From IMG/VR virus record IMGVR_UViG_3300024054_000362, positions 62,001-126,000 of that record: 64,000 bases of DNA, one strand, 5' to 3'. The notes below the pieces were generated by a model that was not told the origin of the DNA, ran no database searches, and saw nothing but the letters and a program-made list of their open reading frames with translations. How positions within the stretch are numbered: position 1 is the first letter of the stretch; every line of letters begins with the position of its first letter. Positions 2,120 through 43,592 of the stretch are shown here, piece after piece. A program made the position numbers and the translations under genes.

Positions 2120-2180
2120 CCGCGTGCTCCTTGGTCGATCGCGCGAGCGATCTAACCCCTTCAAGCTACGCGGTGGGGAG

Positions 2181-4160
2181 CTACCTTGTCAAACGTCGTC
2201 GCCGTCGGTACAGCACGTAACCGCCCGCTCCTGCTGCGATTACGCTAGTCCCCACCACGACCCAGAACAACGGTTGCTTGGTGATCGGCAACGTGCCCGT
2301 CGCCTTCTGGAATTCGGTCAGTGCCACGAGCGACGTGCTCGATGGTAACGTCGCCGCAGTTTGCTGGACGACTTCAAAGGGTGCGCTTTGCTCAAAAGCG
2401 CCGAGCCTTGTATGAACTCGTTTCGCGATTCGAAAACGCTGGATCTTCGGATCGAATGCGGCAATCGACCCCCTCGGATAGATCGGCGTCGTAGCAAGCG
2501 GGACAACTGGTGGCGTCAACGGCAGGAGCACCTGGCCGCCAACGGGCGTCTTCCCCGGACAACCCGTCACGTCGTTGGCAGCAGTCGCCATCGTGATCAT
2601 GTTCGCGGAGATGTTCGCGAGGATCGACGCACGCAGCTGTAGGAGGTGATTCGGAATTCCCGTAACTGGTGTCGACGAACCCGCGCCGGGCGACAGCGGC
2701 GCCGGCTTGGGGAAGTCCATCGCGAGGAACTTCAAGATCGCATACACCAGCTCGGCGACGTCGAGCGCCGCGCAAGCCGCGCGACCCTGTGCCGCTGCCG
2801 ATACGACGGCGGCTGACGTCGCCGGTGTTGCGACGAGACCGGTTCCAGCAGCCGCGATCGCGACGACGACATCGTTGTTGATCAGTGCGCAGCCGAACTC
2901 CTTGATGGTGGAGTAGATCTCCCCGATGTTGTCTTCGATCCAATTCCACGCGTCCGACGCAGCGTCGATGACCGTTCGCGCAGCAGCTGCAACAGCATCG
3001 GCAACGTAGTCCCACGGGTACCGCGATTCGTCTGGATCGGGGACGCGCTTGATCACGAGCAGCTCGGTCTGATCGTTCCAGAACGCGCCCATACGCGAGC
3101 CGTCGTTGCCCTTGAAAACGAGGAACGCAATCGCGCCACGCCGAACACTCAGGTCGAGCGAATCACCTTCGTTTTTGTGTTTCTCCCACTCAGCGAGATC
3201 GCGTGCCGCGAGATTCGCGCGCGGAGCCTTACCGGAGTACGACCGTGACGCGCCCCAGTCCGCCGACACGATCTCCTTACCCTTGGGCCACTCACGGTGG
3301 TCGCGTACTGCCTCACGCGCCATGATCCCTGGCGAAGGTGGTGGCAGCACGGGCTGGCAACCGGCTGGCGACGGACACGTCGTCAGCTGCGCCGTCATCA
3401 ACGGATACTTGATCGTTCGATCGACCTTCTTACACCACTGCCCCGAACGAAGTCGCTCCCAGTGGCCCGGCACGCCGGGCGACGCCGCCCAAATGAAGTT
3501 TCCGTCCGCGCTACACGTTCCGACTTCTGGTGCTGCATTGGTCGCACAACCGCCGAGGCCAATTTCACCGTTTCCACCAAGCCCATAGAGCGGACCGTCG
3601 ATCTTGGGGTCGTAGAAACGGGGCGGACGCCAATCCGACGCGAGAACCGCCTCAGCAGATCCCAACCCTGACGACGGCGCAGGCGGCGGGATGACGGCAA
3701 GCAGTGTTGCGATCGGAGCTGCTGCAACGCTCAACGCGCTCTTCACGGCCTTCATCGCGTTGTCGATGCTGCTCGCAACACCGCCACCGCCTGGAATCAA
3801 CCGAATGATGCCGAGCAGCGCGCTGTAGACCGTATCGATGATCCACGGCGAGAGGACGACGTTGATCACTTCCTCGCCGTACGGGATGACGCTGATCGGT
3901 TTTTTGATCAGTCCAACGACGTCGACAGCAGCGCCGACGACAGGATGGATCTGCGTCCCTACGAACTTTCCCGTATGCGCGATCGCGATGATCGTGCTCA
4001 ACGTCATCGTCCCGTCGTAGCGCGCAGGATCGCATTCGAGCTTCCCACGCTCGAATGCAAAACGGCGGAGCTGCTCCTGCAGCGCCTTTACGCCCGCCGT
4101 GACACCCGTCGGAATCGCGGCGGCGTCACCGAGCAAGTCACCTTGGTTGTAGTGGAGCAC
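2181..4160 (-). CDS. large membrane-anchored virion protein, family A
   Basis: 659 aa; GVKALQEQL..YDGTM; GSIAAFDPKIQRFRIA; QKATGTLPITKQPLFW-TM-RRRRR; several GLG motifs. Confidence 0.75.
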   Translation of the reverse strand: MLHYNQGDLLGDAAAIPTGVTAGVKALQEQLRRFAFERGKLECDPARYDGTMTLSTIIAIAHTGKFVGTQIHPVVGAAVDVVGLIKKPISVIPYGEEVINVVLSPWIIDTVYSALLGIIRLIPGGGGVASSIDNAMKAVKSALSVAAAPIATLLAVIPPPAPSSGLGSAEAVLASDWRPPRFYDPKIDGPLYGLGGNGEIGLGGCATNAAPEVGTCSADGNFIWAASPGVPGHWERLRSGQWCKKVDRTIKYPLMTAQLTTCPSPAGCQPVLPPPSPGIMAREAVRDHREWPKGKEIVSADWGASRSYSGKAPRANLAARDLAEWEKHKNEGDSLDLSVRRGAIAFLVFKGNDGSRMGAFWNDQTELLVIKRVPDPDESRYPWDYVADAVAAAARTVIDAASDAWNWIEDNIGEIYSTIKEFGCALINNDVVVAIAAAGTGLVATPATSAAVVSAAAQGRAACAALDVAELVYAILKFLAMDFPKPAPLSPGAGSSTPVTGIPNHLLQLRASILANISANMITMATAANDVTGCPGKTPVGGQVLLPLTPPVVPLATTPIYPRGSIAAFDPKIQRFRIAKRVHTRLGAFEQSAPFEVVQQTAATLPSSTSLVALTEFQKATGTLPITKQPLFWVVVGTSVIAAGAGGYVLYRRRRRLTR

Positions 4161-4168
4161 GCACGTAC

Positions 4169-4957
4169 CTAGTAGTACGCCGCCTTCGCCACGACAGGTG
4201 CACGACGACGCATGAGCAGCGCCGCGCCGCCACCAAGGATGATCACGCCGCCCGCGATCGCGACCCAGAAGAGCGGCTTCTTGAAGATCGGCTGCGTGCC
4301 CGTCTTCTCTTCGAAGTTACCCTCCGTGATCGTTGTGGCGCTTGCTGAAGGCGTTGCCGCGGATGGAATTTCAGAAATGGTTGGGGATGCACCTAAACCG
4401 AAAAAATCGCGCAAACCGGTTTGCGGCGGCAACGTCGTACCAACGGGAATGCCAACACGCCACAACCCCGTCTTGGCACTGAACGCTTGAACTGATCCGA
4501 CCGGCAGGTTGGTGTATGTCTGCGGTGTGCCAGTACTCGATGGCGTCGTCGGAAACTGCGTCGACGGCGGAAACTGCTGTGTTGATGTCGTCGGGAATGG
4601 CTGGCTCGGTGGGAACTGCTGGTCCGCGCCTGCCGGCTGGAACGTGTTCGATGTCTGGAACGCCGCGAACCGTGGATCCGTCGAAGACGACGATGTCGTC
4701 TGGAACGACGGTCCGAAAGCCGCCTGCGCGAGATGTGCGTTCGCCGTTGTGGTCGGCGTGTGCTGCTCTGCGGGTCGACCGCCACAGATCCCTTGCGCGG
4801 CGGACGTCACGAAGGCACCCATCGCCTGCGGCGTCGAGCGTGGCGCATGAACGCCCTCGACAGCAGGTCCGATCTCGCAAGCGAGATTCTGCAGATCGGC
4901 CACAGTCGAGTCCTCGACTGGGCGCGCATCACGACCGTTCAGCTGCGCGTAAAGCAT
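4169..4957 (-). CDS. membrane-anchored protein, family A
   Basis: GSVQAFSAKTGLWRVGIP; EEKTGTQPIFKKPLFW-TM-RRR; QQFP repeats. Confidence 0.75.
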   Translation of the reverse strand: MLYAQLNGRDARPVEDSTVADLQNLACEIGPAVEGVHAPRSTPQAMGAFVTSAAQGICGGRPAEQHTPTTTANAHLAQAAFGPSFQTTSSSSTDPRFAAFQTSNTFQPAGADQQFPPSQPFPTTSTQQFPPSTQFPTTPSSTGTPQTYTNLPVGSVQAFSAKTGLWRVGIPVGTTLPPQTGLRDFFGLGASPTISEIPSAATPSASATTITEGNFEEKTGTQPIFKKPLFWVAIAGGVIILGGGAALLMRRRAPVVAKAAYY

Positions 4958-5096
4958 GTTGGCTCCAAGTCGATCGCGCGCGCGATCTTGACACTTTCAA
5001 GCTACTCGCCGGGTACGCACGTTGTCAAATGCCCGATCGCAGCAGCGATCGCCGCGAAGCTACCCAGAAACCCTGAGGTCATGTTAGGTTGAACGT

Positions 5097-5942
5097 ATGA
5101 CCGAAGCGGTACTCGGGCGCGCTTTCACCGTCGGTGCTCAGGCCGGCCGCGCGCTCGCGCGACGACATCGCGTCCGCAGCTCCCTCGGTGCAACCGACGG
5201 GTTGACTACGACTTCCAGTGAAAAGATCGCCATCGCTGCCATCATCGCAGGCGGTGTCGCCGTGCTTGGTGGTGCAATCGCGTATGGAATTGCCGCGCGC
5301 CGTCGTACGGCTACACTGCGAGACACGCTCGGTCGCGTCCAGACACGCGTCAGCAAGGGCGGCATGACGCTCACCCACCACTACGATCCAGAGATGCCGA
5401 TCCAGCAACGCGTCGGCATTCTCCAGGATCTCGTGTGGAAGGGCGTCACCAACCCACAGATGCGCGAACTTGCGCTCGCGATCACGGGCTACGGAACACG
5501 TGACGTCACCGTCGGCAAGCGGCGATTCCGTGTGAAGGGTGCGGGTTGTCCCGCGCGCGACGGACTTTGCGAGTCCGAGGCGGTCTACAACTGGACCAAG
5601 AACAACATCCGCTACACCGGCGACGTCGCGCCCGTGAAGATGCCAGGAGGTGACGTTGAAGGCGTCGACCTCTTCCAGGCACCGCACCGCACCGTCGAAT
5701 TCGGTGGCGAAGACTGCGATGGCCACACGGTCGTCACGACGACGCTTCTCTCACTCAACGGCATCCCTGCAAAGTTTCGCATCACCGCGCCGACGAAATC
5801 TAGTGACTGGGCACACATCTTCGGGCTCGCGGGCCTCCCGAAGACCAATCCGAAGCGTTGGGTGCCCTTGGATACAACCCTTCCAGGAAACATGTTTGGA
5901 CGAGAAGTACCCTCGGCCAAGCACATGGATTTTGTTGCTTGA
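5097..5942 (+). CDS. transglutaminase-like cysteine enzyme with N-terminal TM (putative maturation protease)
   Basis: VYNWTKNNIRY, GGEDCDGH (Cys), WAHIF (His), WVPLDTT (Asp): transglutaminase-core triad order; hydrophobic segment IAIAAIIAGGVAVLGGAIAYGIA. Confidence 0.8.
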   Translation: MTEAVLGRAFTVGAQAGRALARRHRVRSSLGATDGLTTTSSEKIAIAAIIAGGVAVLGGAIAYGIAARRRTATLRDTLGRVQTRVSKGGMTLTHHYDPEMPIQQRVGILQDLVWKGVTNPQMRELALAITGYGTRDVTVGKRRFRVKGAGCPARDGLCESEAVYNWTKNNIRYTGDVAPVKMPGGDVEGVDLFQAPHRTVEFGGEDCDGHTVVTTTLLSLNGIPAKFRITAPTKSSDWAHIFGLAGLPKTNPKRWVPLDTTLPGNMFGREVPSAKHMDFVA

Positions 5943-6486: not shown

Positions 6487-6574
6487 GTCTGATTGGTTGT
6501 AACATGCACGCTGATTGGTCGCAATAACCTCGACGCTATGGTGATCGTACCCGCGACCGTGATACGTTCATCAC

Positions 6575-6799
6575 GTGAGCTGCTCCATCGGCTACGAGGT
6601 CTCGTTCGAAGTTCGCTCGCTGAAGACAACGCGCAACGTGGTCTTCACGAAGAAGCAAGCTGCACGCGACTTCAAGAAGAAATGGCCAGGCGCGACGATC
6701 CGCGCTGTGGAAATCTGCGACGACACCGGCAAGATCACGCGTCGAGGCAAGCGTACCTTCACCGGACGTCGCAAGCATCGGGTGCGTCGTCGACGGTGA
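6575..6799 (+). CDS. small basic protein
   Basis: 74 aa ending RRKHRVRRRR; GC3-biased codons. Confidence 0.5.
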   Translation: MSCSIGYEVSFEVRSLKTTRNVVFTKKQAARDFKKKWPGATIRAVEICDDTGKITRRGKRTFTGRRKHRVRRRR

Positions 6800-7839: not shown

Positions 7840-8397
7840 TTAGCAACCGCGAACGACACGAACGACGCGCGCCTTCTTTACACCGCCGCGAACCAGATCC
7901 GCTGCATCGGTCTTGTTGGCCGCTTCGACACAGAGGCTCGTCGGCGTCGGGAACTTCGGGTAGCGCACCGTCACGCGGTAACGCGCACCGAGCGCACGAC
8001 CACGCAGTTTCTTGTACTCGACGGTCGACTGATCAAGTTCGATTACGTCGCCTGTGGCTGGATCAACAAAGTAGACGGGCTCCCGCTCCCGCGTCGGCCG
8101 TTTGTACGGTCCACGCTTCGCGCCCGCCAACGCCTCTGACGAACGTCGAAAGATTGTCAGTGCGGCGATGCCAGCCCCGATCGCCGCGATGCCTGCGACG
8201 ACAACAGCAGGAACGAGAACCTTGCGAGCTGCATCCTCGGCGTTACAGCGAACTGTCGAGACTAGCTCGTCGGCGATGCCTTTGGCCGTCGCTTCGTCGA
8301 TGGGTTGAATCGGACCGACTGAAATACTCGTCAGCTTCTGCACGAGCGCGTTCGGGTCACTCGACGGGCAGGCACCCAAACACGAGACGGCGAGCAT
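7840..8397 (-). CDS. membrane protein with basic C-terminal domain
   Basis: SCLGA, TM VLVPAVVVAGIAAIGAGIAALTIF, RALGA. Confidence 0.65.
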   Translation of the reverse strand: MLAVSCLGACPSSDPNALVQKLTSISVGPIQPIDEATAKGIADELVSTVRCNAEDAARKVLVPAVVVAGIAAIGAGIAALTIFRRSSEALAGAKRGPYKRPTREREPVYFVDPATGDVIELDQSTVEYKKLRGRALGARYRVTVRYPKFPTPTSLCVEAANKTDAADLVRGGVKKARVVRVVRGC

Positions 8398-8624
8398 TAG
8401 GTATCTCCCGACGGCTTTCGTTTGGTGACGTGTGCGAGTACTTCGCTTGGCATGAAGCGAACACGATTTCCGATTCGGAAATGCGGCAGTTCATGAAGGC
8501 GTCGACGAATCGTCGCCGAACTCACTTTCAAGAAGCTCGCTAGTTCCCGCGGCGTCAGCGGCCGTTCGATCGTCTGAGGGATCACGACGTCCCCCAGCGC
8601 GCGTTGACGTCGACGCTTCGCCAT
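8397..8624 (-). CDS. excisionase-like helix-turn-helix protein
   Basis: LTPRELASFLKVSSATIRR..LPHFRIGNRVRF; N-terminal MAKRRRQRALGD. Confidence 0.75.
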   Translation of the reverse strand: MAKRRRQRALGDVVIPQTIERPLTPRELASFLKVSSATIRRRLHELPHFRIGNRVRFMPSEVLAHVTKRKPSGDT

Positions 8625-8741
8625 CTCTTCAGCACAACGTACGTGGAGTCGCGGACGCGATCAAGTCACCAACGTGATCAGGGATGCTCAGTGATGATCA
8701 GGGATCAACAGGCTAACTCAGCGAAATCGCAGTCCTTTATA

Positions 8742-8770
8742 TTGCAGTCGCGCGAGCGATCGACTACGGT
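8742..8770 (+). promoter_or_regulatory. putative sigma70-like promoter overlapping a palindromic operator
   Basis: TTGCAG-17 nt-TACGGT; AGTCGC-GCGA-GCGATC lies in the spacer. Confidence 0.4.
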
Positions 8771-8776
8771 ATTCGC

Positions 8777-9640
8777 ATGATGGTCCCGTGGACGCGCAGT
8801 GAGCACGTCTCGATGCATTGGCGCCCCGACGCCATTACGTCGACGAGCGTGATCCAGCCGATGTGGATCCGTCAGCTCTCGCCCGTGGACATGGCAACGC
8901 ACACCGTCGATCCGTTCGTTACGTCCGTTCGCGGTCGTGGTCCGGCGGTATCGCCGTATCCATCGTCCGAGGACGTCGCGTACGCCGCGGGCAAGCTCGC
9001 ACAGCTGTTCGCCCGCGGCCAGACCGGTGTCGTATGTGCCGGCACGGAGAAGATTCGCGTCGACGCGAACACGCCGCCGAGCGGCGGTATCGTCGGCATC
9101 ATCATCCAGGCCGCACAGCAGCTCATGCGCGGTGGCCCGGTGAAGATCCAGATCGGCTCGCGCGCCGTCATGGTCTGCAACAGCGGACCCAATGGTGAAC
9201 CGGCCATCACACCGACGAACGGCGCGGCACCGGCCATCACACCAGCGAACGGTGCAGCTTCGCCCGCACAGCCTACCTCGATGACAGTCGGCCCGACGAG
9301 TGGCCTCGGCCAGATGCAGGAAGTGCTACCGAAGGTCCCACCACCCGGGCATGTCCCTCAACAACCGTTCCTCGACTACGCATTCACGTACCGGAAGCTC
9401 AACTACGACGACAACGTTTGGGGTCGTCGGAACTTCCAGGCGTCAATCGCGAGTCGCTTTGCACCAAACGCGATCGCGGCGACGAACGCCGTTGCATCGA
9501 TTCCGGTGCGCGACGCTCAACGCCAGGTCGATCCGGCGCTCGCGTCGCGCGCACCGATGGTGATGCGGCGATGGCCACACCCCGAAGCGGTGTGGCCGCA
9601 CCAGGCGCACATGGTCCACACCCGCCGAGGGGGTCGCTGA
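8777..9640 (+). CDS. hypothetical virion protein
   Basis: first gene of the capsid operon; PAITP repeats, SGLGQ. Confidence 0.6.
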   Translation: MMVPWTRSEHVSMHWRPDAITSTSVIQPMWIRQLSPVDMATHTVDPFVTSVRGRGPAVSPYPSSEDVAYAAGKLAQLFARGQTGVVCAGTEKIRVDANTPPSGGIVGIIIQAAQQLMRGGPVKIQIGSRAVMVCNSGPNGEPAITPTNGAAPAITPANGAASPAQPTSMTVGPTSGLGQMQEVLPKVPPPGHVPQQPFLDYAFTYRKLNYDDNVWGRRNFQASIASRFAPNAIAATNAVASIPVRDAQRQVDPALASRAPMVMRRWPHPEAVWPHQAHMVHTRRGGR

Positions 9641-11738: not shown

Positions 11739-13364
11739 ATGACAAGTTTGTCCACGCGTTTTTGGGCACTTACCGAGCAAGTTGATGGATGTTGTGTGTG
11801 GCGTGGCGGACAGTCAAACGGCCATGCGCGGTTTCATCTTCTCGCCGACGAGCGTGCTGTCTTCGAAGGTCGACGCGACATCTCTGCGCAACTTGTCGCA
11901 TGGTATCTGACCCACAACACCACCGAGCGCTTCGTCGATCGCACGTGTGGCAACACGCTCTGCGTCGAGCCAACACATCTTGAAGTGCGAACGATCGCCT
12001 CACGCTTCTGGCGAAACGTCGATCGTAGTGACGCGAACGGTTGTTGGCCGTGGAGAGGCGGCAAACACACCTTCGGATACGGCTCGACGAGTCACGGCTC
12101 GGCACATCGTATGGCCTACGAGCTTACTTACGGCGCAATCCCCGAAGGTGCCGTCGTGCGGCATACCTGCCATCAGCCGACGTGCTGTCGTCCCGATCAT
12201 CTCAAACTCGGTACGCAACGCGACAACGTCCACGACGCCATAGAAGCCGGACGAATGAACTACGCACGCGGTGAACGGATCCCACTCGCGAAATTCACCG
12301 ATGCACAAGCGGCAGCCATTTGTGAAGTCTTCACGGCGATGCGTAAAAACGCTGCTGAACCCAAACGTGAATCCATAGACAAGCTCGCACGCGCGTTGAA
12401 CGTCAATGCACGTACGGTCTGGCGGGTCGTCACCAACCGTGCATATCAAGATGTCGCCGTCGACGGTTCAACCGCGGGTGTTCTTCAGGCACTGCGTAGG
12501 CAAGGCTTCCCATGGCAAACAGTTCTCGACGTCGAAGAAGATCCTATCGCGCGTGTGCGCAATGCCAAGCTTGTCGTCGAGCACGACATCGTTACCAGCG
12601 TTGGAAGCGGCGGTCAGGCAACCTGTCTTCAGGCGCATCCACACCGATTCGCGGCGCGGCACCGCGGGCAACTATCTCTGATTGAAGCGTTCAACGATGA
12701 TGCCACGCTGACGCGCGCCATTCAGTACCAACAACGTCGCGGCGATCCCACTACACCAGCTAGCGTCGTACGCGCGCTTCAAGCGTTGGTGCGTTCACCG
12801 CGCAACTTCCCGCCTGCACTCGCGCGTTGGATCGTCGATGAATATGCACCAGAACATGGAACTGTTCTCGATCCGTGTTCTGGTTACGGTGGTCGCTTGC
12901 TTGGTGCAATAGCAAGCACGAAGAACGTGTGTTACATCGGACGTGACATCAACCCCGACTCCGTCCGCGGCAACCAACAGCTAGCGCAACAGTTGAAGGT
13001 CGACGAACGCGTCACGCAAACGCTCGCGTCCGTCCTCGACGACGATTGGCCCTCGGCGGATTTGATTTTCACGAGCCCGCCGTACTTCAACATCGAGGAC
13101 TACAGCAACGAGCCTGGTACGGAAACGTACGAGAGCTGGCGCGACGGCTTTTTGACGACGCTGATTGCACGCGCGCTCGCGGCTGCACCGCGACTTGTGC
13201 TCAACGTGGCTGCCGTAGGCGAACATGATCTTCCAACTGACGCTGTGCGGATTGCTGAGGTGCTAGGCGGTCGCATTGAGCGGATGTTGACATGGCCGCT
13301 ACGAAGTTTCGGTCGTGGTCCGCGCCGCGAGGAGAAGATCCTTGTCTTTCGATGTACCTTGTGA
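11739..13364 (+). CDS. HNH endonuclease - HTH - DNA amino-methyltransferase fusion
   Basis: CWPWRG..AHRMAY..VRHTCHQPTCCRPDHL (HNH) plus a degenerate upstream copy; LDPCSGYGG (SAM motif I) and FTSPPY (motif IV). Confidence 0.8.
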   Translation: MTSLSTRFWALTEQVDGCCVWRGGQSNGHARFHLLADERAVFEGRRDISAQLVAWYLTHNTTERFVDRTCGNTLCVEPTHLEVRTIASRFWRNVDRSDANGCWPWRGGKHTFGYGSTSHGSAHRMAYELTYGAIPEGAVVRHTCHQPTCCRPDHLKLGTQRDNVHDAIEAGRMNYARGERIPLAKFTDAQAAAICEVFTAMRKNAAEPKRESIDKLARALNVNARTVWRVVTNRAYQDVAVDGSTAGVLQALRRQGFPWQTVLDVEEDPIARVRNAKLVVEHDIVTSVGSGGQATCLQAHPHRFAARHRGQLSLIEAFNDDATLTRAIQYQQRRGDPTTPASVVRALQALVRSPRNFPPALARWIVDEYAPEHGTVLDPCSGYGGRLLGAIASTKNVCYIGRDINPDSVRGNQQLAQQLKVDERVTQTLASVLDDDWPSADLIFTSPPYFNIEDYSNEPGTETYESWRDGFLTTLIARALAAAPRLVLNVAAVGEHDLPTDAVRIAEVLGGRIERMLTWPLRSFGRGPRREEKILVFRCTL

Positions 13365-13811: not shown

Positions 13812-14021
13812 ATGACCACCCAGCGCCCAACTTCCACCAAGGCGCTCAACGCCTTCCTCGTCGCTCGCGGCCTGACGTTGACCGTCGCACTCTCACAGGT
13901 CGGCGGCGATGTCGCCCTCCTCAACGAGGAGACTATCAGCGACGACATGATCGGCAAGATCGCACGTCGCTACGGCCTGACGTTCGAGCAACTGCGTGAC
14001 GGCGCCGCAGCGCACGCGTAA
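13812..14021 (+). CDS. small XRE-like DNA-binding protein
   Basis: 69 aa, helical, ..KIARRYGLTFEQL. Confidence 0.4.
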   Translation: MTTQRPTSTKALNAFLVARGLTLTVALSQVGGDVALLNEETISDDMIGKIARRYGLTFEQLRDGAAAHA

Positions 14022-14607
14022 GCGTAGCGTCCATATACACAGATCACTCACAGATCACCGTGATCTTCTTCTTGGTACGGATGATCTTCGCCAGCATTTC
14101 GAAAAACGCTGCGATGTCTTCACCGTCCGCACTCGAAAATTCACAAATCACGCGCGCTGCCAGAAGCTGTCTCGGCAGAGGCTTGGTAGGTACGCGACTC
14201 TCCGGTGGCTCGATGTCGTCAACGATCGTCTTCTCGACCTCGTCTATCGCCGACCGCGCCGCATGGCGCTGACCAACATCATGGCCACACGGTGTAACTA
14301 ACGTCGTTCCAATCGGGCACGTGTTGCATGCGTCGCCGCGACAGAACGGACACGTCGGACCTGGGCACGTGAGCGGCGAGATGTCTCTAGGTTACCCGAG
14401 TTGTCGATCGCTGGAGCGATCCAGTCGCGCACGGCATCTTGCTCTCGACTTGGCGGTCGTGTTACGGCTGACACCGCGATCGATGAGTTAGGGGTTGGTC
14501 TGCACCGTACGTAACGCCTCGATTTGATTTGGGAAAATCTCCGTTGTCAGACAGCTCCTGTAGCGTTGATCGCGTTCAACCGACCGTTTCAGAAGGAGCA
14601 CGAGAGC

Positions 14608-20561: not shown

Positions 20562-20648
20562 CCGTCTATGCTCCTCGTCGATCGCAGGAGCGATCGCCCC
20601 CCAAGTCTACCTCGATCGACCCGTCTTCGTGCGTGTTACCGTGCCGCC

Positions 20649-21856: not shown

Positions 21857-21865
21857 GGCTTCATC

Positions 21866-26787: not shown

Positions 26788-26790
26788 TGG

Positions 26791-27777: not shown

Positions 27778-28049
27778 AGCGCCTCGGTCCCAATGTACGA
27801 GGCCTCGAAGAGAGGGTCAAACGGTCGCTGCTGGGATCCCTCATGTTCCTGCGGCGATCGCTTGCGCGATCGCTCCTGGGATCGTGCTAGGATGGCCGCA
27901 TGCTCGGTCGTCGTGCTCCCAAGGCAGCTGGCAACAACTGTTGTGTTCGGCAGGTCCCCACTCGTCCTGCAGTCACACCGCGTCCAGTGCCACAACCGAC
28001 ACAGCGCCCGATCCAACGCCCCCTCGTGAAGCGATAAGAGGAGATCAAG

Positions 28050-28370: not shown

Positions 28371-28378
28371 GTCACGCC

Positions 28379-28600: not shown

Positions 28601-28603
28601 CCC

Positions 28604-28840: not shown

Positions 28841-28892
28841 AAACATCGTGAGGGCCGCCCACACCCAACGTGAATCACCGAGTAGTACCCAA

Positions 28893-29189: not shown

Positions 29190-29205
29190 CGCCAAGGAGA
29201 TACTG

Positions 29206-29634: not shown

Positions 29635-29686
29635 ACGACGTGCTAGCTTCCTCCTGTCGCCACTTCGTGACGACATGGGTAGAAAC

Positions 29687-30019: not shown

Positions 30020-30034
30020 GTGCGTGTTTCTCCC

Positions 30035-30364: not shown

Positions 30365-30486
30365 GGAACGTGTCTCCAGCTTTGGCCATTCACAGCACTT
30401 CGACAGGTCCACGCCGAGACATTGAACTTACGCGCAAGCGCAGCCCAGGACAACCCGCAGTCTCTCGCCTGACGCAGTTCAACCAT
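30361..30486 (-). pseudogene. remnant C-terminal HTH of an HNH homing endonuclease
   Basis: GLSWAALARKFNVS..AVNGQSWRHV, a typical HNH-associated tail with no nuclease domain. Confidence 0.55.
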
Positions 30487-30487
30487 T

Positions 30488-30598
30488 TTAGAACGCGCCA
30501 CGGCTATGTCCCCTACAGGCTTCGCAACCTGGGATCGTGAACAGCGCCACGACGACGTTCGGTCCATGCGGCATGCGTTTTTGCCTTGCAGCCATCAT
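30488..30598 (-). pseudogene. truncated original 5' end of the thioredoxin-like gene
   Basis: NVVVALFTIPGCEAC then an early stop; duplicates the start of 30035-30364. Confidence 0.6.
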
Positions 30599-30733
30599 CC
30601 TACTCTGGAACGGACGTTTGATCGAGGTTTCAGCGCACTTCGGAGGGCGATCGCGCGAGCGATCTTTGACCGGTCCGGTAGGTGCGTGATACACGTTTGA
30701 GGGACGTAGGCGCACGATCCGACACGGAGATCC

Positions 30734-31396: not shown

Positions 31397-31398
31397 CC

Positions 31399-32037: not shown

Positions 32038-32040
32038 TCC

Positions 32041-32775: not shown

Positions 32776-32827
32776 GCGATCGCTTGCGCGATCAAGTTTG
32801 TGGTAGGCTCTGCTAGAGGCACCCCAC

Positions 32828-33772: not shown

Positions 33773-33810
33773 CCCGTGCTCGCCTCCTCGACAAACTGGA
33801 GAGGTCGTCT

Positions 33811-34269
33811 ATGCTCTCCGTGACGCAATCCCAACGCGTCGAGGATAGAAACGGCGAGAGCGCCAACGAACTGATCGCGGCGTGGGGGCGGAGCGGCTAT
33901 CGCTACGGCTTCCCCGACTTCTACGCAGCGCAGTTCCCGGTCCGTCCGATGTACTACGACCAAAGCTGCATCTACAACGGTGTGATCGGTCGGCACTACC
34001 CGGACGCGCAGACCGGCCGCTACCACTACATGTTCGATCAGAACATGTACCTGCAGCCCGGCAACTACGATCCCAACCCGTTCCCGACGCGGGGGTTTGG
34101 TCAGACCGAACCAGCGTCGACACCGCCGGTAACACAGGCCGCCGTTCAGACCCCGTCATCAGGTACAGCCCGCGCAGGTCGCGTCGCAATCGGTGTAGGG
34201 ATCACGGCAGTTCTGATCGGCGCCGGCATCTTCATCAGCTCGCGATCGCGGCGTTCTTCCCATCGCTAG
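33811..34269 (+). CDS. Tyr-rich membrane protein
   Basis: RGFGQ, C-terminal TM + basic tail. Confidence 0.65.
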   Translation: MLSVTQSQRVEDRNGESANELIAAWGRSGYRYGFPDFYAAQFPVRPMYYDQSCIYNGVIGRHYPDAQTGRYHYMFDQNMYLQPGNYDPNPFPTRGFGQTEPASTPPVTQAAVQTPSSGTARAGRVAIGVGITAVLIGAGIFISSRSRRSSHR

Positions 34270-34302
34270 CAAGTAGGGCAAAGCGCGAGTATAATCACAC
34301 TC

Positions 34303-34533
34303 GTGAACAAGCCCAAACGCCCCAAGTCCCGTGCGCGACCCAGTCGCAGCGGCGATCGAATCTCCCATCTGCACGTCGTGATCGACGAGGAACTGCAAGA
34401 AGGCCTCGAAGCGCACGCCGTCAAGCTTGACCCTCGCGCAAAGGTTGTCGGTCGCCGGCTGAACCTCTCCGCGGCGGCGCGAGACGCCATGCGGAAGGGC
34501 CTGGGGCTCCGCACTGCTGCGCGCGCAGCCTGA
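34303..34533 (+). CDS. ribbon-helix-helix-like DNA-binding protein
   Basis: LHVVIDEELQEGLE..NLSAAARDAMRKGL. Confidence 0.55.
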   Translation: MNKPKRPKSRARPSRSGDRISHLHVVIDEELQEGLEAHAVKLDPRAKVVGRRLNLSAAARDAMRKGLGLRTAARAA

Positions 34534-34569
34534 CGATCGCTCCAGCGATCGGTGTGGTATCGTCGCGGT

Positions 34570-35067
34570 ATGCGCCGACTCGGCCGATCTCGGATTCCCA
34601 ACGGCTATGCGCGTCGTCACGGCTGTACGGCCAAGGATGTCGATCCTGCGCAGCTCAAGATCGGAATGGAAGTCGAGATGGAGCACACGAGCGACCCAAA
34701 AATCGCTCGTGAAATCGCCCTCGATCACATCTGCGAAAACAAGGGACGTCCCTACTACATCCCGGCAGGTGTTCGACACGAACAGCTGCTTCTCAAACGT
34801 CGTGGTGGATTCGGTGCCGTCGGAGGGACGAGTTGTTCGACGAGCCCACGATGGGTCCGTGGCGGTATCGGACTTTTGTTGGGCGGCGTCCTCGGCGGCA
34901 TGATCGGCGGCGGCATCGCCATGGTGATGGTCAACTCGGCCAGCATCACCGAGCCGCTACAGTCGGCGATTCGGCTGAAGACCGCAACTATGCTCCCGAT
35001 CTTCGGAGCCCTCGTTGGTGGCGCGGGCGTCGGCATCTTCGCCGCCGCCAAGCCGGAGTGCACGTGA
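34570..35067 (+). CDS. DUF5661-like domain fused to a Gly-rich membrane hairpin
   Basis: QLKIGMEVEMEHTSDPKIAREIALDH..YY; C-terminal ..KPECT. Confidence 0.65.
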   Translation: MRRLGRSRIPNGYARRHGCTAKDVDPAQLKIGMEVEMEHTSDPKIAREIALDHICENKGRPYYIPAGVRHEQLLLKRRGGFGAVGGTSCSTSPRWVRGGIGLLLGGVLGGMIGGGIAMVMVNSASITEPLQSAIRLKTATMLPIFGALVGGAGVGIFAAAKPECT

Positions 35068-35324
35068 GACGCCGACACCGTCAGTTAGGCGCGGAATGTG
35101 CCACCAGCTCACGCCTGTCGCGTGGCGTCGTCGGCGGCATCATGGGCGGCGTCGCAGGCGGCGTAATCGGCCTCCTTGTCGGCGCTGTCGTCGGTTTCAA
35201 AAAGATCAACGATGCATCGTCGCAGACGGCACCGTTCAAGGCCTCGATTGGAGCTGCCGCCGGGGTCACCGCTCTCGGCATTCTTGTCGGCGCGACGGCG
35301 AGCGCCATCCAACCGGAGTGCTGA
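35064..35324 (+). CDS. Gly-rich two-TM hairpin protein
   Basis: RRRHRQLGAEC...IQPEC. Confidence 0.65.
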   Translation: MRRRHRQLGAECATSSRLSRGVVGGIMGGVAGGVIGLLVGAVVGFKKINDASSQTAPFKASIGAAAGVTALGILVGATASAIQPEC

Positions 35325-35557
35325 TGGCACGCGACATCCTTGTGAAGCGCAGCTGTAAGGGAAGCTCGCGTGCTGCACGCGCAGTCGAAGGTGCAGCCCT
35401 CGGCGCGATCGTCGGTCTGTTTGCAGGCGGTTTGATCGGCGGCCTTGTATTTGCGGGCGGGTCTTCGAAGAAGACCGCGATCCTTGTCGGACTGGGCGTG
35501 ATGGGCGCCGCCACGGCCGGCGAGAGCGTGCTTACGGCTCTGCCGCCCGAATGCTAG
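35324..35557 (+). CDS. Gly-rich two-TM hairpin protein
   Basis: RSC...LPPEC. Confidence 0.65.
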   Translation: MARDILVKRSCKGSSRAARAVEGAALGAIVGLFAGGLIGGLVFAGGSSKKTAILVGLGVMGAATAGESVLTALPPEC

Positions 35558-35615
35558 CGAGGTAGCGCTCGCGGTCTCTTGCGTCGTGCTTCATGTTAGT
35601 GGTGCTGCGTGGACG

Positions 35616-36822
35616 TTACTTGACCCCCTTATTGCAGCCCTTCCCCTTGCGACAGAAGAAGTACGTGCCGTCGTAGTAGACATGCGCGATCAGGTTCTTC
35701 GCCGGTCGCCGTGCAGGCTTGCGTCGAACCTTGCAACAGCTCGTCGGAAGCAGTCGGTTCGGCGGGTTCTTGACCCAGTGGTTGCGGTCCAACAACGCGA
35801 TCGCGTAACGCGTCGCCGGCTGATCCACAGCACGGTAGATGTGGAAGCTCATCGGGACCTGCGCTCCTTCTGAACGACGTCGTACGCCGCCTCGGCCTGT
35901 GCGTACGTCGTGACGATGCCCTCGCGAGCTTGGGTCGCGATGATGGTCGGGACCATCAACCTTCGACGAAGAACCGGATCGGCCAAGATCGCCCGGATAT
36001 CGACTCGTCTCAGCATGGCCAACCCTCCGTTTCGAGATGGTGCGCCCACGCGCCTGCCTCGTAGTCTTCGAGCTGATCGGCGAACCACTGTCGCTGCCGC
36101 TCGTCGCCGTTGTGGGCGGAACGCCAAGACTCCATCCGCTCGTTGTAGTTGCGATAGCCGTCATGGAAGGCGGTCGACGGAAAGCCGCCTGTGATGTGCT
36201 CGAACTTCCCGATCAGGAAGTCGTAGGCGAGCTGCTCGACGTACGGGTTCAGCGACTCGCCGAACGGCAGCAGCGCGAAGCAATGATCGCAGTGAAACGT
36301 CCGCGCGGTTTTGAAATCGCGCCGCATGTGGCACTTGTACCCGTTGGCGTCCTGCCAGTGACGTCCGGGCGGATGCTCGCAGCGTTTCTGGAGAGCCTTG
36401 AGCTTCCGCAGGGCCTTCGCTCGACGTTCATCTTCGGTCATGGGCTAGTCCTTCCCCATCACGTCGACGTGGAAGCGGCCAGCACTGTACGCTGCCTTGA
36501 GCGCTCGCGCGTGGCCGTTGCGGTACTGCGTCGCGAGCAGCGCCACCAGCTCGTTCCGTGACCGCGGCTTGTTGCCGATCATGGCATCGGTGACGCCGAT
36601 CTTCGCCGCCATGTTGAGCTGCTCGCACCATTCGTGCGGCGAACAGTTGACGAGATCGACGCGCTTGAAGGTGATGCTCTTCGGTTCATTCGACGAGATC
36701 TCATCGATGGTGAACGGCCCGCCAGACGTGTACTGCAAGAGGCCGAGACCGTCGATCGAGACCTGGCAGGAGTTGCGGCCCTGACCTGCGTGGATTCGCG
36801 CTGCGAGCTTGGGAGACTTCAT
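35616..36822 (-). other. leftward operon of four small hypothetical genes (35616-35852, 35849-36016, 36010-36441, 36445-36822)
   Basis: abutting or overlapping ORFs with coding-like bias. Confidence 0.55.
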
Positions 36823-41924: not shown

Positions 41925-43433
41925 ATCAGTTCTACGAGACGATCGCGAAGCTTTGTGAGCCCAAGACCCGTGCGCTGATTGCCTGCCAGATCCCATGCGG
42001 CGACGGTTGGATGGATCGAACGTACGAGGTCGTTCGGTCGCGCGACGGTCAGTGGATGGTCGACTTCGGCGCTGGCCCGCTCGAACCTCGACGGAGCTGG
42101 GAAGACATCCTGAACTGGCTCTGTCGCCTGTCGCCGCGCGACGTCGAGATGATGGAGGAGGAGCGCAGTGTTTTCGAGAAATCTGTACGAAGACGTTCCC
42201 GTGAACGAGGTCGAGCGCTTCTTATGGCGTGAGAAGCACGTACGCGGCTTCTTGACAAACATCCAACGCGAGCTGATTGATTCGGCACTCACGCGTGACG
42301 ATGTCGAACAGGCCAAAAAATTTCTGCGTGACTGGAAGGTTCTACGTGATGACGCTCGATGAGATGAAGACGCTGTACGTGAAGACGATGGGACCATCGT
42401 CGTTCGAGATCGAAGGCGACGGCCCGTTCACGGTGCGTGTCTACGACGGCATGGACCACTGTTGGTGCGATGTACTTGTCGGCGTCGATTTAGCGTTCGC
42501 GTTGCAGCGTTGGTGCAAGGAAACCAAGAACGGCACCGAGAAGACCTGCTTCGACGACATCGACTACTACCGGATCTTCCCGGCGAACACGCGCATGCTC
42601 AACCCTTGGGCCCGGGACGACTGATCGTGAAGATCTTGAAGGGCCGCGTCGACTGGCGGGAAGACGATCACACGGAACGCCCCGACGTTCTGCTCCTGGT
42701 TGATGCTGTTCCCGCACGCGAGGACATGCGTTTCGATCAACGAAACTACGCACTCAACAACGGCTGCCACCGTAGCGTCTTCTACGCCGAGGACGACGGC
42801 TTCTGTCGAGCGTTCTCGACAAGCATGGGAGTGTTCGAAGAGGAACCTCGCTCGGTAGTCGGCCGTACGACTTGGCGACCGATCACGATGCACGATGGCT
42901 CACGTCGGTGGGCATCTACTTCGACCGTCGCACCGTCCGGTTTTCGTCTCAACGATCTAGGTTTCGGCCCGTGCATGCCGATTCGCTATACGACCTGCGA
43001 ACATCGCTACCGACAAGGACACGCGCTGACGGGCTGGGTGCTCGTCTCGAAGCTTCGCGCGAATGCACATCTGATCGACGTCGGAGAAGGCTATAGCTGG
43101 CGACCCGGCCTCGCTTCAGCTGCTGGCGTCGTCTTCCCCGGAGGTAGTCGGTTCTCGTTGGCGTGCTGTGCCGCTGGGAACGAGTACAGCAGCACCGGGT
43201 ATCGAAGCGAAAAGCGAATCGTCACCGATCGTTTCCCTGACGGCGTTCTCGTCGAAGACGCCCGCAACGCCATCCAAGCTTCGCTTGCTGCAGGACACGC
43301 GAACGTCGCGAAGGAAATCGCCGACCGCTACGTCCGTTACTTGGGGGCGAACGCAACTGGTGTCCTACTGACCTTGCTGAGCTACGAGCCGGCTGTCAAG
43401 CTGCCAGACGGCACGTTTTGGGTCCGCCCATAG
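41921..43433 (+). other. cluster of hypothetical genes (41921-42232, 42349-42624, 42627-43433)
   Basis: co-oriented abutting ORFs. Confidence 0.5.
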
Positions 43434-43592
43434 GGGCCCCTCAAGAGCTTTCTCGTCGAAGATCGCCTCACCGCCAACAGGTCGATCGCTGATGCGATAA
43501 AGCTCTTGACAAGTCGCGCGAGCGATCGCAGACTCGTCGCTGACACGATCGAGCTACGGCCCGCGGGGCCAAACTAGGGAGCCACGAAGAAC

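What the first reader, a model, noticed from the sequence alone, without database searches (positions are those of the whole stretch)
2137..43527. Recurrent 16-bp palindrome GATCGC-N4-GCGATC upstream of operons
Seen: perfect copies at 2137, 4972, 5035, 14406, 20580, 27856, 30649, 32778 and 34535, and near copies at 8746, 43484 and 43512. These sit in short intergenic gaps, sometimes inside a -35/-10 spacer (TTGCAG 8742, TTGACA 43506). One in-CDS copy at 49487 (I-A-R-A-I) shows that chance hits occur. Inference: operator of a dimeric regulator coordinating mostly late genes. Candidate binders are 8397 (HTH), 13812 and 34303 (RHH-like).
Basis: partly seen in the sequence, partly recalled or inferred. 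Interest (0 to 1): 0.65.

Follow-up and report, generated by a model that had tools for sequence, protein, structure and literature searches.

The report
Promoter-bound palindromic operator of a huge phage
A 16-base palindrome (GATCGC-N4-GCGATC) sits on about forty promoters of a 221-kb virus from lake water and is almost certainly the docking site of one DNA-binding protein, most likely a repressor, that switches a large set of genes (many for membrane-anchored proteins) together.

Summary
The window has 10 perfect copies of GATCGC-N4-GCGATC against 0.02 expected. The whole 221,422-bp IMG/VR virus record has 36. Only the N4 spacing is enriched, and perfect copies are 26-32 times denser in non-coding than in coding DNA. 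A relative that shares about 72% nucleotide identity over the quarter of the genome that aligns (G002) has 44 copies. They lie upstream of the same orthologous genes (19/25 against 8/132, p 2e-13), with invariant half-sites and a free N4.

The commonest layout puts the palindrome 4-5 nt upstream of an extended -10 (TGnTAnnnT), and the start codon follows 6-7 nt later, so the mRNA is leaderless. In other cases it sits at about +12 behind consensus TTGACA-N18-TAGCTT promoters, inside a -35/-10 spacer, or further upstream.

I read it as the operator of a dimeric or tetrameric regulator, most likely a repressor. "Mostly late genes" is not supported: no head, tail or lysis gene was recognised among the targets, which are enriched for proteins ending in a membrane helix plus a poly-Arg tail.

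The binder is not identified. The window's HTH_17 gene (8397) carries a conserved weakened copy on its own promoter. The RHH-like gene (34303) has a conserved palindrome-free promoter. No DNA-binding fold was found for 13812.

This is a new member of a known kind (P1, phiC31, RK2 style multi-operator control).

The parts
2137..2152 (.). Perfect palindrome at about +5..+20 of a consensus promoter on the - strand. The layout is -35 TTGACA 2187-2192, 18 nt, -10 TAGCTT 2163-2168, palindrome, SD AAGGAG 2127-2132, then ATG of gene 1040-2119 (359 aa, C-terminal TM helix plus poly-Arg tail).
   Evidence: The same geometry (centre +11.5) is found at the G002 orthologue (site 143238).
4972..4987 (.). 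Perfect palindrome centred about +12.5 behind - strand promoter TTGACA 5023-5028 / TAGCTT 4999-5004. It is followed by SD GGAG and the ATG of gene 4169-4957 (262 aa, C-terminal anchor). That gene heads an operon with 2181-4160 (659 aa).
5035..5050 (.). Perfect palindrome in the same divergent control region, 63 bp from 4972. It lies upstream of the - strand -35 and about 55 nt upstream of the leaderless + strand promoter TGnTAGGTT 5085-5090 / ATG 5097 (transglutaminase-like gene 5097-5942).
   Evidence: G002 keeps two sites here (140496, 140560).
6543..6558 (.). Degenerate copy (2 mismatches) directly upstream of gTGaTACGTT, then 6 nt, then GTG of gene 6575-6799. This is the class B layout.
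8647..8662 (.). Weakened copy (on the - strand GATCGC-GTCC-GCGACT) 5 nt upstream of -10 TACGTT 8636-8641 of the HTH_17 gene. The same GCGACT variant half-site is present in G002.
8397..8624 (-). Candidate binder 1: a 75-aa HTH_17 (excisionase/MerR-like HTH) protein, 69% identical in G002.
   Evidence: Pfam PF12728 E 9.5e-9, above the cut-off; orthologue and promoter alignment
8746..8761 (.). Near copy AGTCGC-GCGA-GCGATC filling the spacer of TTGCAG 8742-8747 / TACGGT 8765-8770. ATG 8777 follows 6 nt later (leaderless gene 8777-9640).
14406..14421 (.). Perfect palindrome upstream of a CTCTCGACTTG -35-type element. The gene is 14608-16917 (769 aa, vWA-type in Vi1-like phages) and has a long leader. 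This site is not conserved in G002.
20580..20595 (.). Perfect palindrome between divergent genes. It lies just downstream of - strand -10 TAGACT 20604-20609 (about +2..+17), before SD GAGGAG and the ATG of gene 20007-20561. It is also about 60 nt upstream of the leaderless NUDIX promoter TGtTACCGT 20637-20642 / GTG 20649.
   Evidence: It is perfect in G002 and degenerate (GATCGC-N5-GCGGTC) in the distant relative G006.
27856..27871 (.). Perfect palindrome with an overlapping 1-mismatch copy (27868-27883) and a 2-mismatch copy (27823-27838). It is followed by TGcTAGGAT 27888-27893, 6 nt, and ATG 27900 (a small conserved leaderless ORF). Divergent gene 26791-27777 lies on the other side.
   Evidence: G002 site 119156 has the same layout.
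30649..30664 (.). Perfect palindrome lying 1 nt upstream of a -35-like TTGACC 30666-30671 (-10 region 30690-30695). The gene is 30734-31396 and has an SD.
   Evidence: G002 keeps two sites upstream of the orthologue.
32778..32793 (.). Perfect palindrome 2 nt after the stop of the upstream gene and 10 nt before TGgTAGGCT 32804-32809. The gene is 32828-33772 (314 aa, C-terminal TM plus poly-Arg).
34303..34533 (+). Candidate binder 2: a 76-aa RHH-like protein. It has its own palindrome-free leaderless promoter (AAAGCGCGAGTATAAT, 7 nt, GTG) that is conserved in three lineages.
   Evidence: No Pfam hit. Profile against PDB gives the RHH repressor ArtA at E 0.14 across the whole domain. AF2 pLDDT 67, two helices after an extended stretch. 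Promoter alignments.
34535..34550 (.). Perfect palindrome 1 nt after the RHH-like gene's stop, 7 nt before TGgTATCGT 34558-34563, then 6 nt to ATG 34570 (leaderless DUF5661 membrane protein). It is the best footprint in the set: the half-sites are identical in three lineages while N4 reads TCCA, GCAC and GCCC.
43484..43527 (.). Pair of near copies bracketing the -35 of a CTCTTGACA-type promoter. GATCGC-TGAT-GCGATA (43484-43499) lies upstream. AGTCGC-GCGA-GCGATC (43512-43527) fills the 17-bp spacer between TTGACA 43506-43511 and CAGACT 43529-43534. The gene is 43593-44687 (MoxR-type AAA), followed by a DUF2201/VWA gene.
   Evidence: The GCGATA variant is also present in G002.
49487..49502 (.). 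Perfect copy inside CDS 49302-49613 (reads I-A-R-A-I), 107 nt upstream of gene 49610-50596. Its status is uncertain.
13812..14021 (+). No DNA-binding family was detected; it is 48% identical in G002 and its promoter is not conserved.

Best explanation
GATCGC-N4-GCGATC (usually cGATCGC-N4-GCGATCg) is the DNA operator of one sequence-specific, two-fold symmetric DNA-binding protein.

It is placed on the core of roughly 40-50 host-RNA-polymerase promoters of this 221-kb virus. Most often it covers -32 to -17, directly abutting an extended -10 (TGnTAnnnT) that fires leaderless mRNAs. In other cases it covers about +5 to +20 behind consensus TTGACA/TAGCTT promoters, or fills or flanks a -35/-10 spacer.

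Inferred, not shown: a protein bound at these places keeps RNA polymerase off or stuck, so the site works mainly as a repressor operator. It would hold one regulon silent until the protein is removed, diluted or out-titrated. That regulon is rich in small proteins with a C-terminal membrane anchor and a poly-Arg tail.

The binder is probably encoded by the virus. The two best candidates are the RHH-like protein at 34303-34533 (constitutive-looking, conserved promoter) and the HTH_17 protein at 8397-8624 (own promoter carries a conserved weakened copy, as in negative autoregulation).

Shown: the motif, its statistics, its geometry and its conservation. Inferred: protein binding, the sign of regulation and the identity of the binder.
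For: 1. Specificity. The window has 10 copies against 0.02 expected and the genome has 36. Only N4 is enriched. Perfect copies are 26-32x denser in IG than in CDS.
2. Footprint. G002 has 44 copies and G008 has 11. A site upstream of a G000 gene predicts a site upstream of the G002 orthologue (19/25 against 8/132, odds ratio 49, p 2e-13), although those proteins are only 31-86% identical. At the RHH/DUF5661 junction three lineages keep all 12 half-site bases while N4 and the flanks differ.
3. Geometry. TAnnnT peaks 4-5 nt after the palindrome (13 of 72 orientations in G000 and 14 of 88 in G002, against about 0.4 per offset further away). ATG or GTG follows 6-7 nt later.
4. DNA level rather than RNA. 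In about 12 divergent regions (for example G000 131963 and 174350) the site lies upstream of both predicted start points and would not be transcribed.
5. Repression rather than activation.
   a. Sites centred at +11.5/+12.5 behind 6/6 TTGACA promoters are conserved in G002. One site fills a 17-bp spacer.
   b. Offsets to the -10 vary (4-5, 7-10, 14-16 nt), which changes the helical face.
   c. The same protein class (C-terminal TM plus poly-Arg; 10/36 against 18/333, p 8e-5) lies behind both the +12 and the -24.5 geometries, so one sign of control is expected, and only repression fits both.
   d. The distant relative G006 has 13 TGnTAnnnT leaderless promoters and no palindrome, and G000 has such promoters without it. 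The promoter type therefore works alone.
6. Binder candidates.
Against: - No binding or expression data exist. Only DNA runs from lake water hold this sequence.
- The dominant layout (inverted repeat near -24 plus a -10 and no -35) is also that of P1 Lpa-activated late promoters (PMC10695390), so activation or dual control is a serious rival.
- The -10 hexamers are far from TATAAT.
- Gene calls, start points and the 'leaderless' reading are my own predictions.
- Eight or nine G000 copies fall in called CDS. Several are probably miscalls, but not all.
- Four candidate regulators cannot be told apart. The RHH assignment is weak (no Pfam hit, pLDDT 67, Foldseek empty).
- A host-encoded binder is not excluded, because the host is unknown.
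Confidence: 0.55

Rival explanations
1. Activator site of a late or middle promoter class, as in phage P1. There the Lpa protein binds a 9-bp inverted repeat that replaces the -35 of 11 late promoters. The palindrome at -24.5 would recruit RNA polymerase to -35-less promoters. The +12 copies would then make the same protein a dual regulator that shuts off consensus (early) promoters, like phi29 p4.
For: - The commonest position is fixed at 4-5 nt from the -10, with no -35-like hexamer upstream (best matches 2-3 of 6).
- The -10 hexamers are weak.
- P1 precedent (PMC10695390).
- Two collagen-like/tail-fibre-like paralogues are among the targets.
- A paper in hand notes that late genes of well-studied phages are under positive control.
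Against: - Offsets of 7-16 nt are also common and change the helical face.
- Most class B promoters carry the TGn extension, which makes a -35 dispensable.
- The same promoter type occurs without any palindrome in G006 and in G000 itself.
- Copies at +12 with no -10 downstream cannot activate.
- The same protein class lies behind both geometries, which argues against opposite signs of control.
- No recognised morphogenesis or lysis gene is among the targets.
Confidence: 0.22
2. Binding site of a host transcription factor that the virus has recruited to time or condition its genes. The sign of control could be either.
For: - No viral binder could be pinned down.
- Half-sites are identical in three viral lineages that presumably share a host.
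- G006, which lacks the motif, may infect another host.
Against: - The weakened copy on a viral HTH gene's own promoter, conserved in G002, looks like viral autoregulation.
- A genome-collection scan for palindrome plus GTGGTA returned only single scattered hits across phyla. No genome had several.
- I know of no host regulator with this site; that rests on my own recall and was not tested.
Confidence: 0.1
3. RNA hairpin rather than DNA operator. The 6-bp stem with a 4-nt loop would act as a terminator or 3'-end stabiliser for the upstream gene, and as a 5' stem-loop for the class A transcripts.
For: - The RNA folds at -9.8 to -11.1 kcal/mol.
- Several copies start 1-11 nt after a stop codon.
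- Class A copies would lie at the 5' end of the mRNA.
Against: - No U tract follows the copies, and the terminator scan of window 26000-36000, which holds four of them, flags none.
- About 12 copies lie between divergent start points and would not be transcribed.
- The stem sequence is invariant instead of co-varying, and near copies carry uncompensated changes.
- Rfam finds nothing there.
Confidence: 0.05
4. Methylation-related or selfish repeat with no promoter-specific role. Examples would be a HIP1-like or REP-like element, or a paired-GATC target of the viral Dam-type methylase or of a SeqA-like protein.
For: - Each site holds two GATC 12 bp apart.
- A D12-class methylase is conserved in G000, G002 and G008 and was not found in the motif-free G006.
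- GCGATCGC occurs 80 times in G000.
Against: - GATC alone is not enriched in non-coding DNA (15% against 12%), whereas the full site is.
- The strict N4 spacing and the CGC extension go beyond GATC.
- The register with the -10 is fixed, and the sites are conserved gene by gene.
- HIP1 is abundant inside genes (PMC5861425 abstract).
Confidence: 0.05

Closest known systems
Phage P1 control circuits: C1 repressor operators scattered over the genome, and Lpa-dependent late promoters with a 9-bp inverted repeat
   Same: - A large phage genome with dozens of transcription units is governed through one short repeated site.
- P1 late promoters combine a -10 with an inverted repeat in place of the -35 (PMC10695390). 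That the repeat is centred near -22 is my recollection.
- P1 also encodes a Dam-type methylase and a tyrosine recombinase (recollection), and so does this virus.
   Different: - The sequence is different and no Lpa or C1 relative was identified.
- Here one palindrome occupies activator-like (-24.5), repressor-like (+12, spacer) and distal positions.
- C1 operators are asymmetric (recollection).
- The promoters here give leaderless mRNAs.
Streptomyces phage phiC31 conserved inverted repeats bound by repressor c, and mycobacteriophage L5 stoperators
   Same: [quoted passage not shown]
   Different: - L5 sites are asymmetric, are bound by a monomer and block elongation. Here the site is a strict palindrome at promoter cores.
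- Lysogeny is unproven here. There are two tyrosine recombinases but no further evidence.
- No relative of the phiC31 or L5 repressor was sought or seen.
Global plasmid repressors: RK2 KorA/KorB and the RHH regulator ArtA of pSK41
   Same: - One small palindrome-binding protein controls many promoters of a large replicon, from positions overlapping or at a distance from the promoter (own knowledge).
- ArtA is the only solved structure that the RHH-like candidate's profile touches.
   Different: - The ParB-like proteins of G000 are not conserved in G002, so a KorB-type binder is unlikely.
- The ArtA match is weak (E 0.14).
lac O1-type roadblock operators
   Same: A symmetric operator centred about +11 or +12 downstream of a consensus promoter (window 2137 and 4972). 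That lac O1 is centred at +11 is my recollection.
   Different: Only a minority of copies have this position, and no LacI-family protein was found.

Membership tests
Dispersed multi-copy phage/plasmid operator (P1 C1, phiC31 CIR, RK2 KorA/B type) | One short conserved sequence present in many copies across the replicon | tested here: met
   36 perfect copies in G000, 44 in G002 and 11 in the G008 fragment; the reversed-pattern control gives 0.
Dispersed multi-copy phage/plasmid operator (P1 C1, phiC31 CIR, RK2 KorA/B type) | Copies concentrated at promoters or intergenic DNA and overlapping RNA-polymerase contact regions | tested here: met
   IG/CDS density ratio is 26-32. The modal centre is -24.5; other copies sit at +11.5/+12.5 or in a spacer. 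Promoters are predicted, not mapped.
Dispersed multi-copy phage/plasmid operator (P1 C1, phiC31 CIR, RK2 KorA/B type) | A replicon-encoded protein binds the site and changes transcription | not testable with these tools
Dispersed multi-copy phage/plasmid operator (P1 C1, phiC31 CIR, RK2 KorA/B type) | Temperate or plasmid lifestyle that needs genome-wide silencing | tested here: inconclusive
   Two tyrosine recombinases are conserved in G000 and G002. No prophage copy was found in the genome collection.
P1 Lpa-type late promoter | -10 hexamer without a -35, with an inverted repeat at one fixed upstream position | tested here: inconclusive
   The modal offset is 4-5 nt with no -35. However, offsets of 7-16 nt and positions at +12 and at -44 to -79 also occur.
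P1 Lpa-type late promoter | Downstream genes are morphogenesis, packaging or lysis genes | tested here: inconclusive
   No such family was found among about 30 targets. There are weak tail-fibre-like repeats in two paralogues. The structural module was not found anywhere in the record.
Intrinsic (rho-independent) terminator | G+C-rich hairpin followed by a U tract at the 3' end of a transcription unit | tested here: not met
   No T run follows the copies. The scan of window 26000-36000 (four copies) flags none. About 12 copies lie between divergent genes.
MerR-type promoter | Dyad inside an over-long (19-20 bp) spacer between recognisable -35 and -10 hexamers | tested here: not met
   Class B sites have no -35 (2-3 of 6 matches). 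The one clear spacer site has a 17-bp spacer.
HIP1 / REP-like genomic palindromes | Hyper-abundant short palindrome spread through genes and spacers, not tied to promoter elements | tested here: not met
   The 16-mer is intergenic and in register with the -10. GCGATCGC occurs 80 times, but that is a different word. HIP1 description.
HTH_17 (PF12728) for protein 8397-8624 | Score above the Pfam gathering threshold | tested here: met
   35.8 bits against a cut-off of 27, E 9.5e-9; re-found in six-frame search.
Ribbon-helix-helix for protein 34303-34533 | Strand-helix-helix domain recognisable by profile or fold | tested here: inconclusive
   No Pfam hit. The profile against PDB aligns the whole domain to ArtA at E 0.14. 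The AF2 monomer has pLDDT 67 with helices at 29-42 and 57-67 after an extended stretch. Foldseek gave no match.

The most novel reading that the evidence does not exclude
The operators, the conserved Dam-type methylase and a constitutively made small repressor may together form a replication-coupled timer. Each operator carries two GATC on the same face, and there are 36-44 near-perfect copies per genome. Genome replication, through hemimethylation or simple titration of the repressor by new copies, would then release the whole regulon at once. That regulon consists of leaderless genes for tail-anchored membrane proteins. The virus also carries type I-C CRISPR-Cas genes and shows no recognisable capsid or terminase genes.
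Probability: 0.12. Interest if true: 0.75.

Novelty: new member of a known kind. Interest (0 to 1): 0.5.

Why it matters
Regulation in huge uncultured phages is almost unknown, because their genes are mostly orphans. Here a single 16-bp word marks out a conserved regulon of about 40 promoters. It gives base-level promoter predictions (extended -10, leaderless starts) and links dozens of orphan genes into one co-controlled set, many of them proteins with a C-terminal anchor plus a poly-Arg tail. It also offers a short list of four small proteins that can be tested directly by gel shift or DAP-seq. The leaderless promoter style is a clue to the unknown host.

Tried and rejected
- **Close relatives among cultured phages.** Megablast of 10 kb found none. 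Protein searches gave only hits below 35% identity.
- **Host identification.**
  - No WhiB and no region-4 sigma factor.
  - No prophage relative in 185,579 species genomes.
  - The pattern scan of genomes returned scattered single hits, none similar to the virus.
- **Expression data.** Only DNA runs from lake water hold the stretch and no RNA run does.
- **Locating late genes.**
  - PHROG/Pfam scans of about 60 proteins and six-frame searches for Terminase_6N, Terminase_6C and HK97 capsid all came back empty.
  - The 624-aa protein is VWA/TROVE-like.
  - The 359-aa protein is a C-terminally anchored membrane protein, not a capsid protein.
- **ParB/KorB-type binder.** Rejected, because both ParB-like genes of G000 lack a G002 counterpart.
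- **RHH candidate.** phmmer against PDB was empty, Foldseek was empty, and only four word-search homologues exist, all close kin. Only G002 turned up in IMG/VR.
- **Co-variation test in G006** (no palindrome; HTH_17 only 36% identical; no RHH or GerE found). No replacement motif emerged, so the test does not discriminate between candidates.
- **G008.** It covers only the part of G002 that lacks all candidate genes except the second HTH_17.
- **Literature search for the motif.** It returned only cyanobacterial HIP1 papers.
- **The big representative-protein search** was not run.

Full report
**Where the window lies.** The window is bases 62,001-126,000 of a 221,422-bp IMG/VR virus record (G000). 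CheckV rates it complete, it has 61% G+C, and it is held only by lake-water DNA runs. No cultured phage is close. I called genes with my own codon-usage caller (369 genes, 88% coding). All "intergenic", "start codon" and "leaderless" statements rest on that caller and on sequence inspection.

- GATCGC-N4-GCGATC occurs 10 times in the window against 0.02 expected. The near copies at 8746, 43484 and 43512 are there.
- The whole record has 36 copies, and the pattern read backwards gives none.
- The cleanest control for the genome's GATCG-rich composition is the spacing series. There are 36 copies at N4 and 0-4 at every other spacing from 0 to 20. No other 6-N4-6 palindrome exceeds six copies.
- Perfect copies are 26 times denser in non-coding than in coding DNA. 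One-mismatch copies are 2.9 times denser, and copies with two or more mismatches show no excess.
- The half-site alone is only mildly intergenic.
- The base 5' of each half is C in about 70% of cases. The site can thus also be read as two CGATCG palindromes 12 bp apart.

**Relatives.**
- A scan of IMG/VR for the palindrome followed by GTGGTA brought in G002 (195,792 bp, 90% complete), G008 (a 64.8-kb fragment close to G002) and G005 (a near-identical piece of G000).
- G002 aligns to only 27% of G000, at about 72% identity. It nevertheless carries 44 perfect copies with the same spacing specificity and a 32-fold intergenic excess.
- Among 157 reciprocal-best gene pairs, 19 of 25 G000 genes with a perfect copy within 150 nt upstream have one upstream of the G002 orthologue. 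The figure is 8 of 132 for the rest (odds ratio 49, p 2e-13). Those proteins are only 31-86% identical.
- At the junction after the RHH-like gene, three lineages (G000, G002 and a Logan contig, L162) keep all twelve half-site bases, the -10 TATCGT and the distance to the ATG. N4 reads TCCA, GCAC and GCCC in the three.
- A more distant relative, G006, has no perfect copy. At the one orthologous region I aligned it has a decayed version, GATCGC-N5-GCGGTC.

**Anatomy.**
- *Class B (commonest).* This covers about 22 of 36 G000 sites and about 19 of 44 G002 sites. A TAnnnT hexamer begins 4-5 nt after the palindrome, less often 7-16 nt after it, and is usually preceded by TG (gTGgTAnnnT). ATG or GTG then follows after 6-7 nt. 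Taking the start point as the seventh base after the hexamer, the mRNA is leaderless. The palindrome then covers -32 to -17 (centre -24.5), with no -35-like hexamer upstream.
  - Window examples are 34535, 32778, 27856, the near copies 8746 and 8647, and the degenerate 6543.
- *Class A.* The palindrome follows a consensus promoter (TTGACA, 18 nt, TAGCTT) by about 11 nt. Its centre is at +11.5/+12.5 and it precedes a Shine-Dalgarno sequence.
  - Window examples are 2137 and 4972. Site 20580 is similar, behind TAGACT.
  - The 2137 geometry is the same at the G002 orthologue.
- *Other placements.*
  - 43512 fills the 17-bp spacer of TTGACA/CAGACT, with a second near copy (43484) just upstream of the -35. 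The GCGATA variant of that copy is shared with G002.
  - 30649 lies 1 nt upstream of a -35.
  - 5035 and 14406 lie 50-60 nt upstream of a promoter.
  - Several regions hold two copies 19-64 bp apart.

**DNA site or RNA hairpin?** As RNA the element would fold at about -10 kcal/mol. Four points argue for a sequence read on duplex DNA by a two-fold symmetric protein:
- No T run follows the copies, and the terminator scan of window 26000-36000, which holds four of them, flags none.
- About a dozen copies lie between divergent predicted start points and would not be transcribed.
- The stem never co-varies. It is simply invariant, and near copies carry uncompensated changes.
- Rfam has nothing at these places.

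**Repressor or activator?** The layout at -24.5 is the layout of P1 late promoters, where Lpa binds a 9-bp inverted repeat (PMC10695390). The position near -22 is my recollection. I still favour repression, for five reasons:
1. Copies at +12 behind perfect -35 hexamers, conserved in G002, and a copy inside a 17-bp spacer, can only hinder polymerase.
2. The distance to the -10 varies by half-turns of the helix (4-5, 7-10 and 14-16 nt).
3. Nearly all class B promoters carry the TGn extension. In known systems this removes the need for a -35.
4. The same promoter type works without any palindrome in G006 (13 examples with no shared upstream motif), and also in G000 itself.
5. The target genes form one class that lies behind both geometries. 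Twenty-eight G000 proteins end in a Gly/Ala-rich membrane helix followed by a poly-Arg tail, often after a [FY]-x-x-x-P-[LIM]-[FMW]-W motif. They are enriched among the first genes after a palindrome (10/36 against 18/333, p 8e-5; also p 0.004 in G002). Class A operons (2137, 4972) and class B genes (32778, G000 8664, 174350, 175798) encode them alike. One sign of control is the simplest reading, and only repression fits both positions.

This argument is inference. I put repression at a little over one half, and activation or dual control at about one fifth.

**Which genes are controlled?** "Mostly late" is not supported.
- Pfam and PHROG scans of the first genes after the window's sites gave NUDIX, a transglutaminase-like domain, a MoxR-type AAA ATPase, DUF5661 and otherwise nothing.
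- Outside the window the targets include two collagen-like/tail-fibre-like paralogues, an HNH-like protein and many orphans.
- The long operons without palindromes hold replication and nucleotide-metabolism genes: RNR, helicases, primase, thymidylate synthase, SNF2 helicase. Many are headed by a second motif, CTCTTGAC(A/T)(A/T)GTC.
- I could not find a terminase, portal or HK97 capsid gene anywhere. The temporal class of the regulon therefore cannot be named.

**Who binds?** A binder of a site shared by G000 and G002 should be conserved in both.
- A Pfam scan of all 134 conserved proteins of up to 330 aa found only three with DNA-binding domains: two HTH_17 proteins and one GerE/LuxR protein. 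It also found a D12 (Dam-type) methylase and a tyrosine recombinase (located).
- *HTH_17 protein of the window (8397-8624).* Its promoter has the class B layout with a weakened copy, GATCGC-N4-GCGACT, identical in G002. That is the classical design of negative autoregulation. The family also contains excisionases, and the virus has two recombinases.
- *RHH-like protein (34303-34533).*
  - It has no Pfam hit. Its profile aligns end to end with the RHH repressor ArtA at E 0.14.
  - The AF2 monomer (pLDDT 67) shows two helices after an extended segment.
  - The putative strand (H-L-H-x-V-x-D) and the start of helix 2 (N-x-S-x-A-A-R-D) are invariant in five homologues of 51-87% identity.
  - Its promoter (AAAGCGCGAGTATAAT, 7 nt, GTG) is conserved in three lineages and has no palindrome.
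  - It is confined to this viral group and was not found in G006.
- *GerE gene.* It sits 26 nt behind a palindrome in G002, but it lies inside an operon in G000.
- *Protein 13812.* It shows no DNA-binding signature.
- *ParB-like proteins.* Both are absent from G002.
- I cannot choose between the RHH-like and the HTH_17 protein. A host factor is also possible.

**Known or new?** Dispersed operators that tie many promoters of a large phage or plasmid to one regulator are well known. Examples are P1 C1 and Lpa, phiC31 and L5 with 18-30 sites (PMC4557955), and RK2 KorA/KorB. This is a new instance in an uncharacterised lineage. It is notable for four things: the near-perfection and number of its copies, its register with extended -10 leaderless promoters, the coherent membrane-protein regulon, and the paired GATC in each site together with a conserved Dam-type methylase.

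Noticed in passing
G000:115-6250 (outside the window; locus L023): The virus carries type I-C CRISPR-Cas parts. There is a Cas8c/Csd1 gene cut by the record's start (Pfam E 1.4e-26) and a Cas7 gene (E 2.5e-53). About 30 copies of a 36-nt repeat follow (GTCGCGATCGACAACGATCACGACGCGGATAGAAAC, I-C-like ending), mostly with spacers of 29-41 nt but with several larger gaps and degenerate repeats. The repeat's signature word GATAGAAAC does not occur in G002.
   Followed up: partly
window 24763-25084 (+): Group I catalytic intron (Rfam RF00028, 71.8 bits, full-length model, E 3e-16). The interrupted gene was not worked out.
   Followed up: no
G000 genome-wide; in the window e.g. 1040-2119(-), 2181-4160(-), 4169-4957(-), 32828-33772(+), 31399-32775(+): About 28 proteins (7.6% of the proteome) end in a Gly/Ala-rich TM helix followed by RRRR-type tails, often after a conserved motif such as KFFDVKNP.MW or P(L)FWVA..GG. 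The C-terminal module resembles a sorting signal (GlyGly-CTERM/PEP-CTERM style). No sortase-like gene was sought.
   Followed up: partly
window 26340, 39979, 43503, 48774; also G000 40720, 50701/50711, 150558/150594: A second promoter-associated word, CTCTTGAC(A/T)(A/T)GTC (a -35 TTGAC embedded in a small palindrome), lies at the heads of long operons in both G000 and G002. It is probably a separate promoter class.
   Followed up: partly
window 60799-61689 (+) and G000 151581-152516 (+): Two tyrosine recombinases (Phage_integrase family) are conserved in G000 and G002. They hint at lysogeny, a plasmid-prophage state or dimer resolution.
   Followed up: no
G000 180948-181838 (-): A D12-class (Dam-type) N6-adenine methyltransferase is conserved in G000, G002 and G008 and was not found in the palindrome-free G006. 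Further methylase genes lie at window 11796-13364 (HNH plus N6_N4_Mtase) and at G000 21798-23117 (ParB-like plus methylase).
   Followed up: partly
whole record G000 and G002: No terminase (Terminase_6N/6C), HK97 capsid or portal was recognised by six-frame Pfam searches or by PHROG scans of the large proteins. Either the virion genes are very divergent or the record is not a typical tailed phage.
   Followed up: partly
G000 29465-31326 (+): Two paralogous proteins share the N-terminus MGTILKN.VSFTGL. The longer one has a GPTGPTGATG collagen-like run. Both are expressed from palindrome-bearing leaderless promoters.
   Followed up: no
window 34276-34295 and the same place in G002 and L162: The block AAAGCGCGAGTAT(A/G)AT upstream of the RHH-like gene is conserved in three lineages. 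The part upstream of the -10 may be another control element.
   Followed up: no
G000 28645-33957 and 56295-59678: There are thirteen tRNA genes in two clusters, including five tRNA-Leu in a row. The last one ends 7 nt before a perfect palindrome (G000 59685). G002 has only two tRNA genes.
   Followed up: no
window 8660-8745 and G002 138140-138230: Between the divergent HTH_17 promoter and the 8777 promoter, the blocks GATTTCGCTGAGTTAGCCTG and TGATCACGTTGG are conserved between G000 and G002. They may be sites for a further factor.
   Followed up: no
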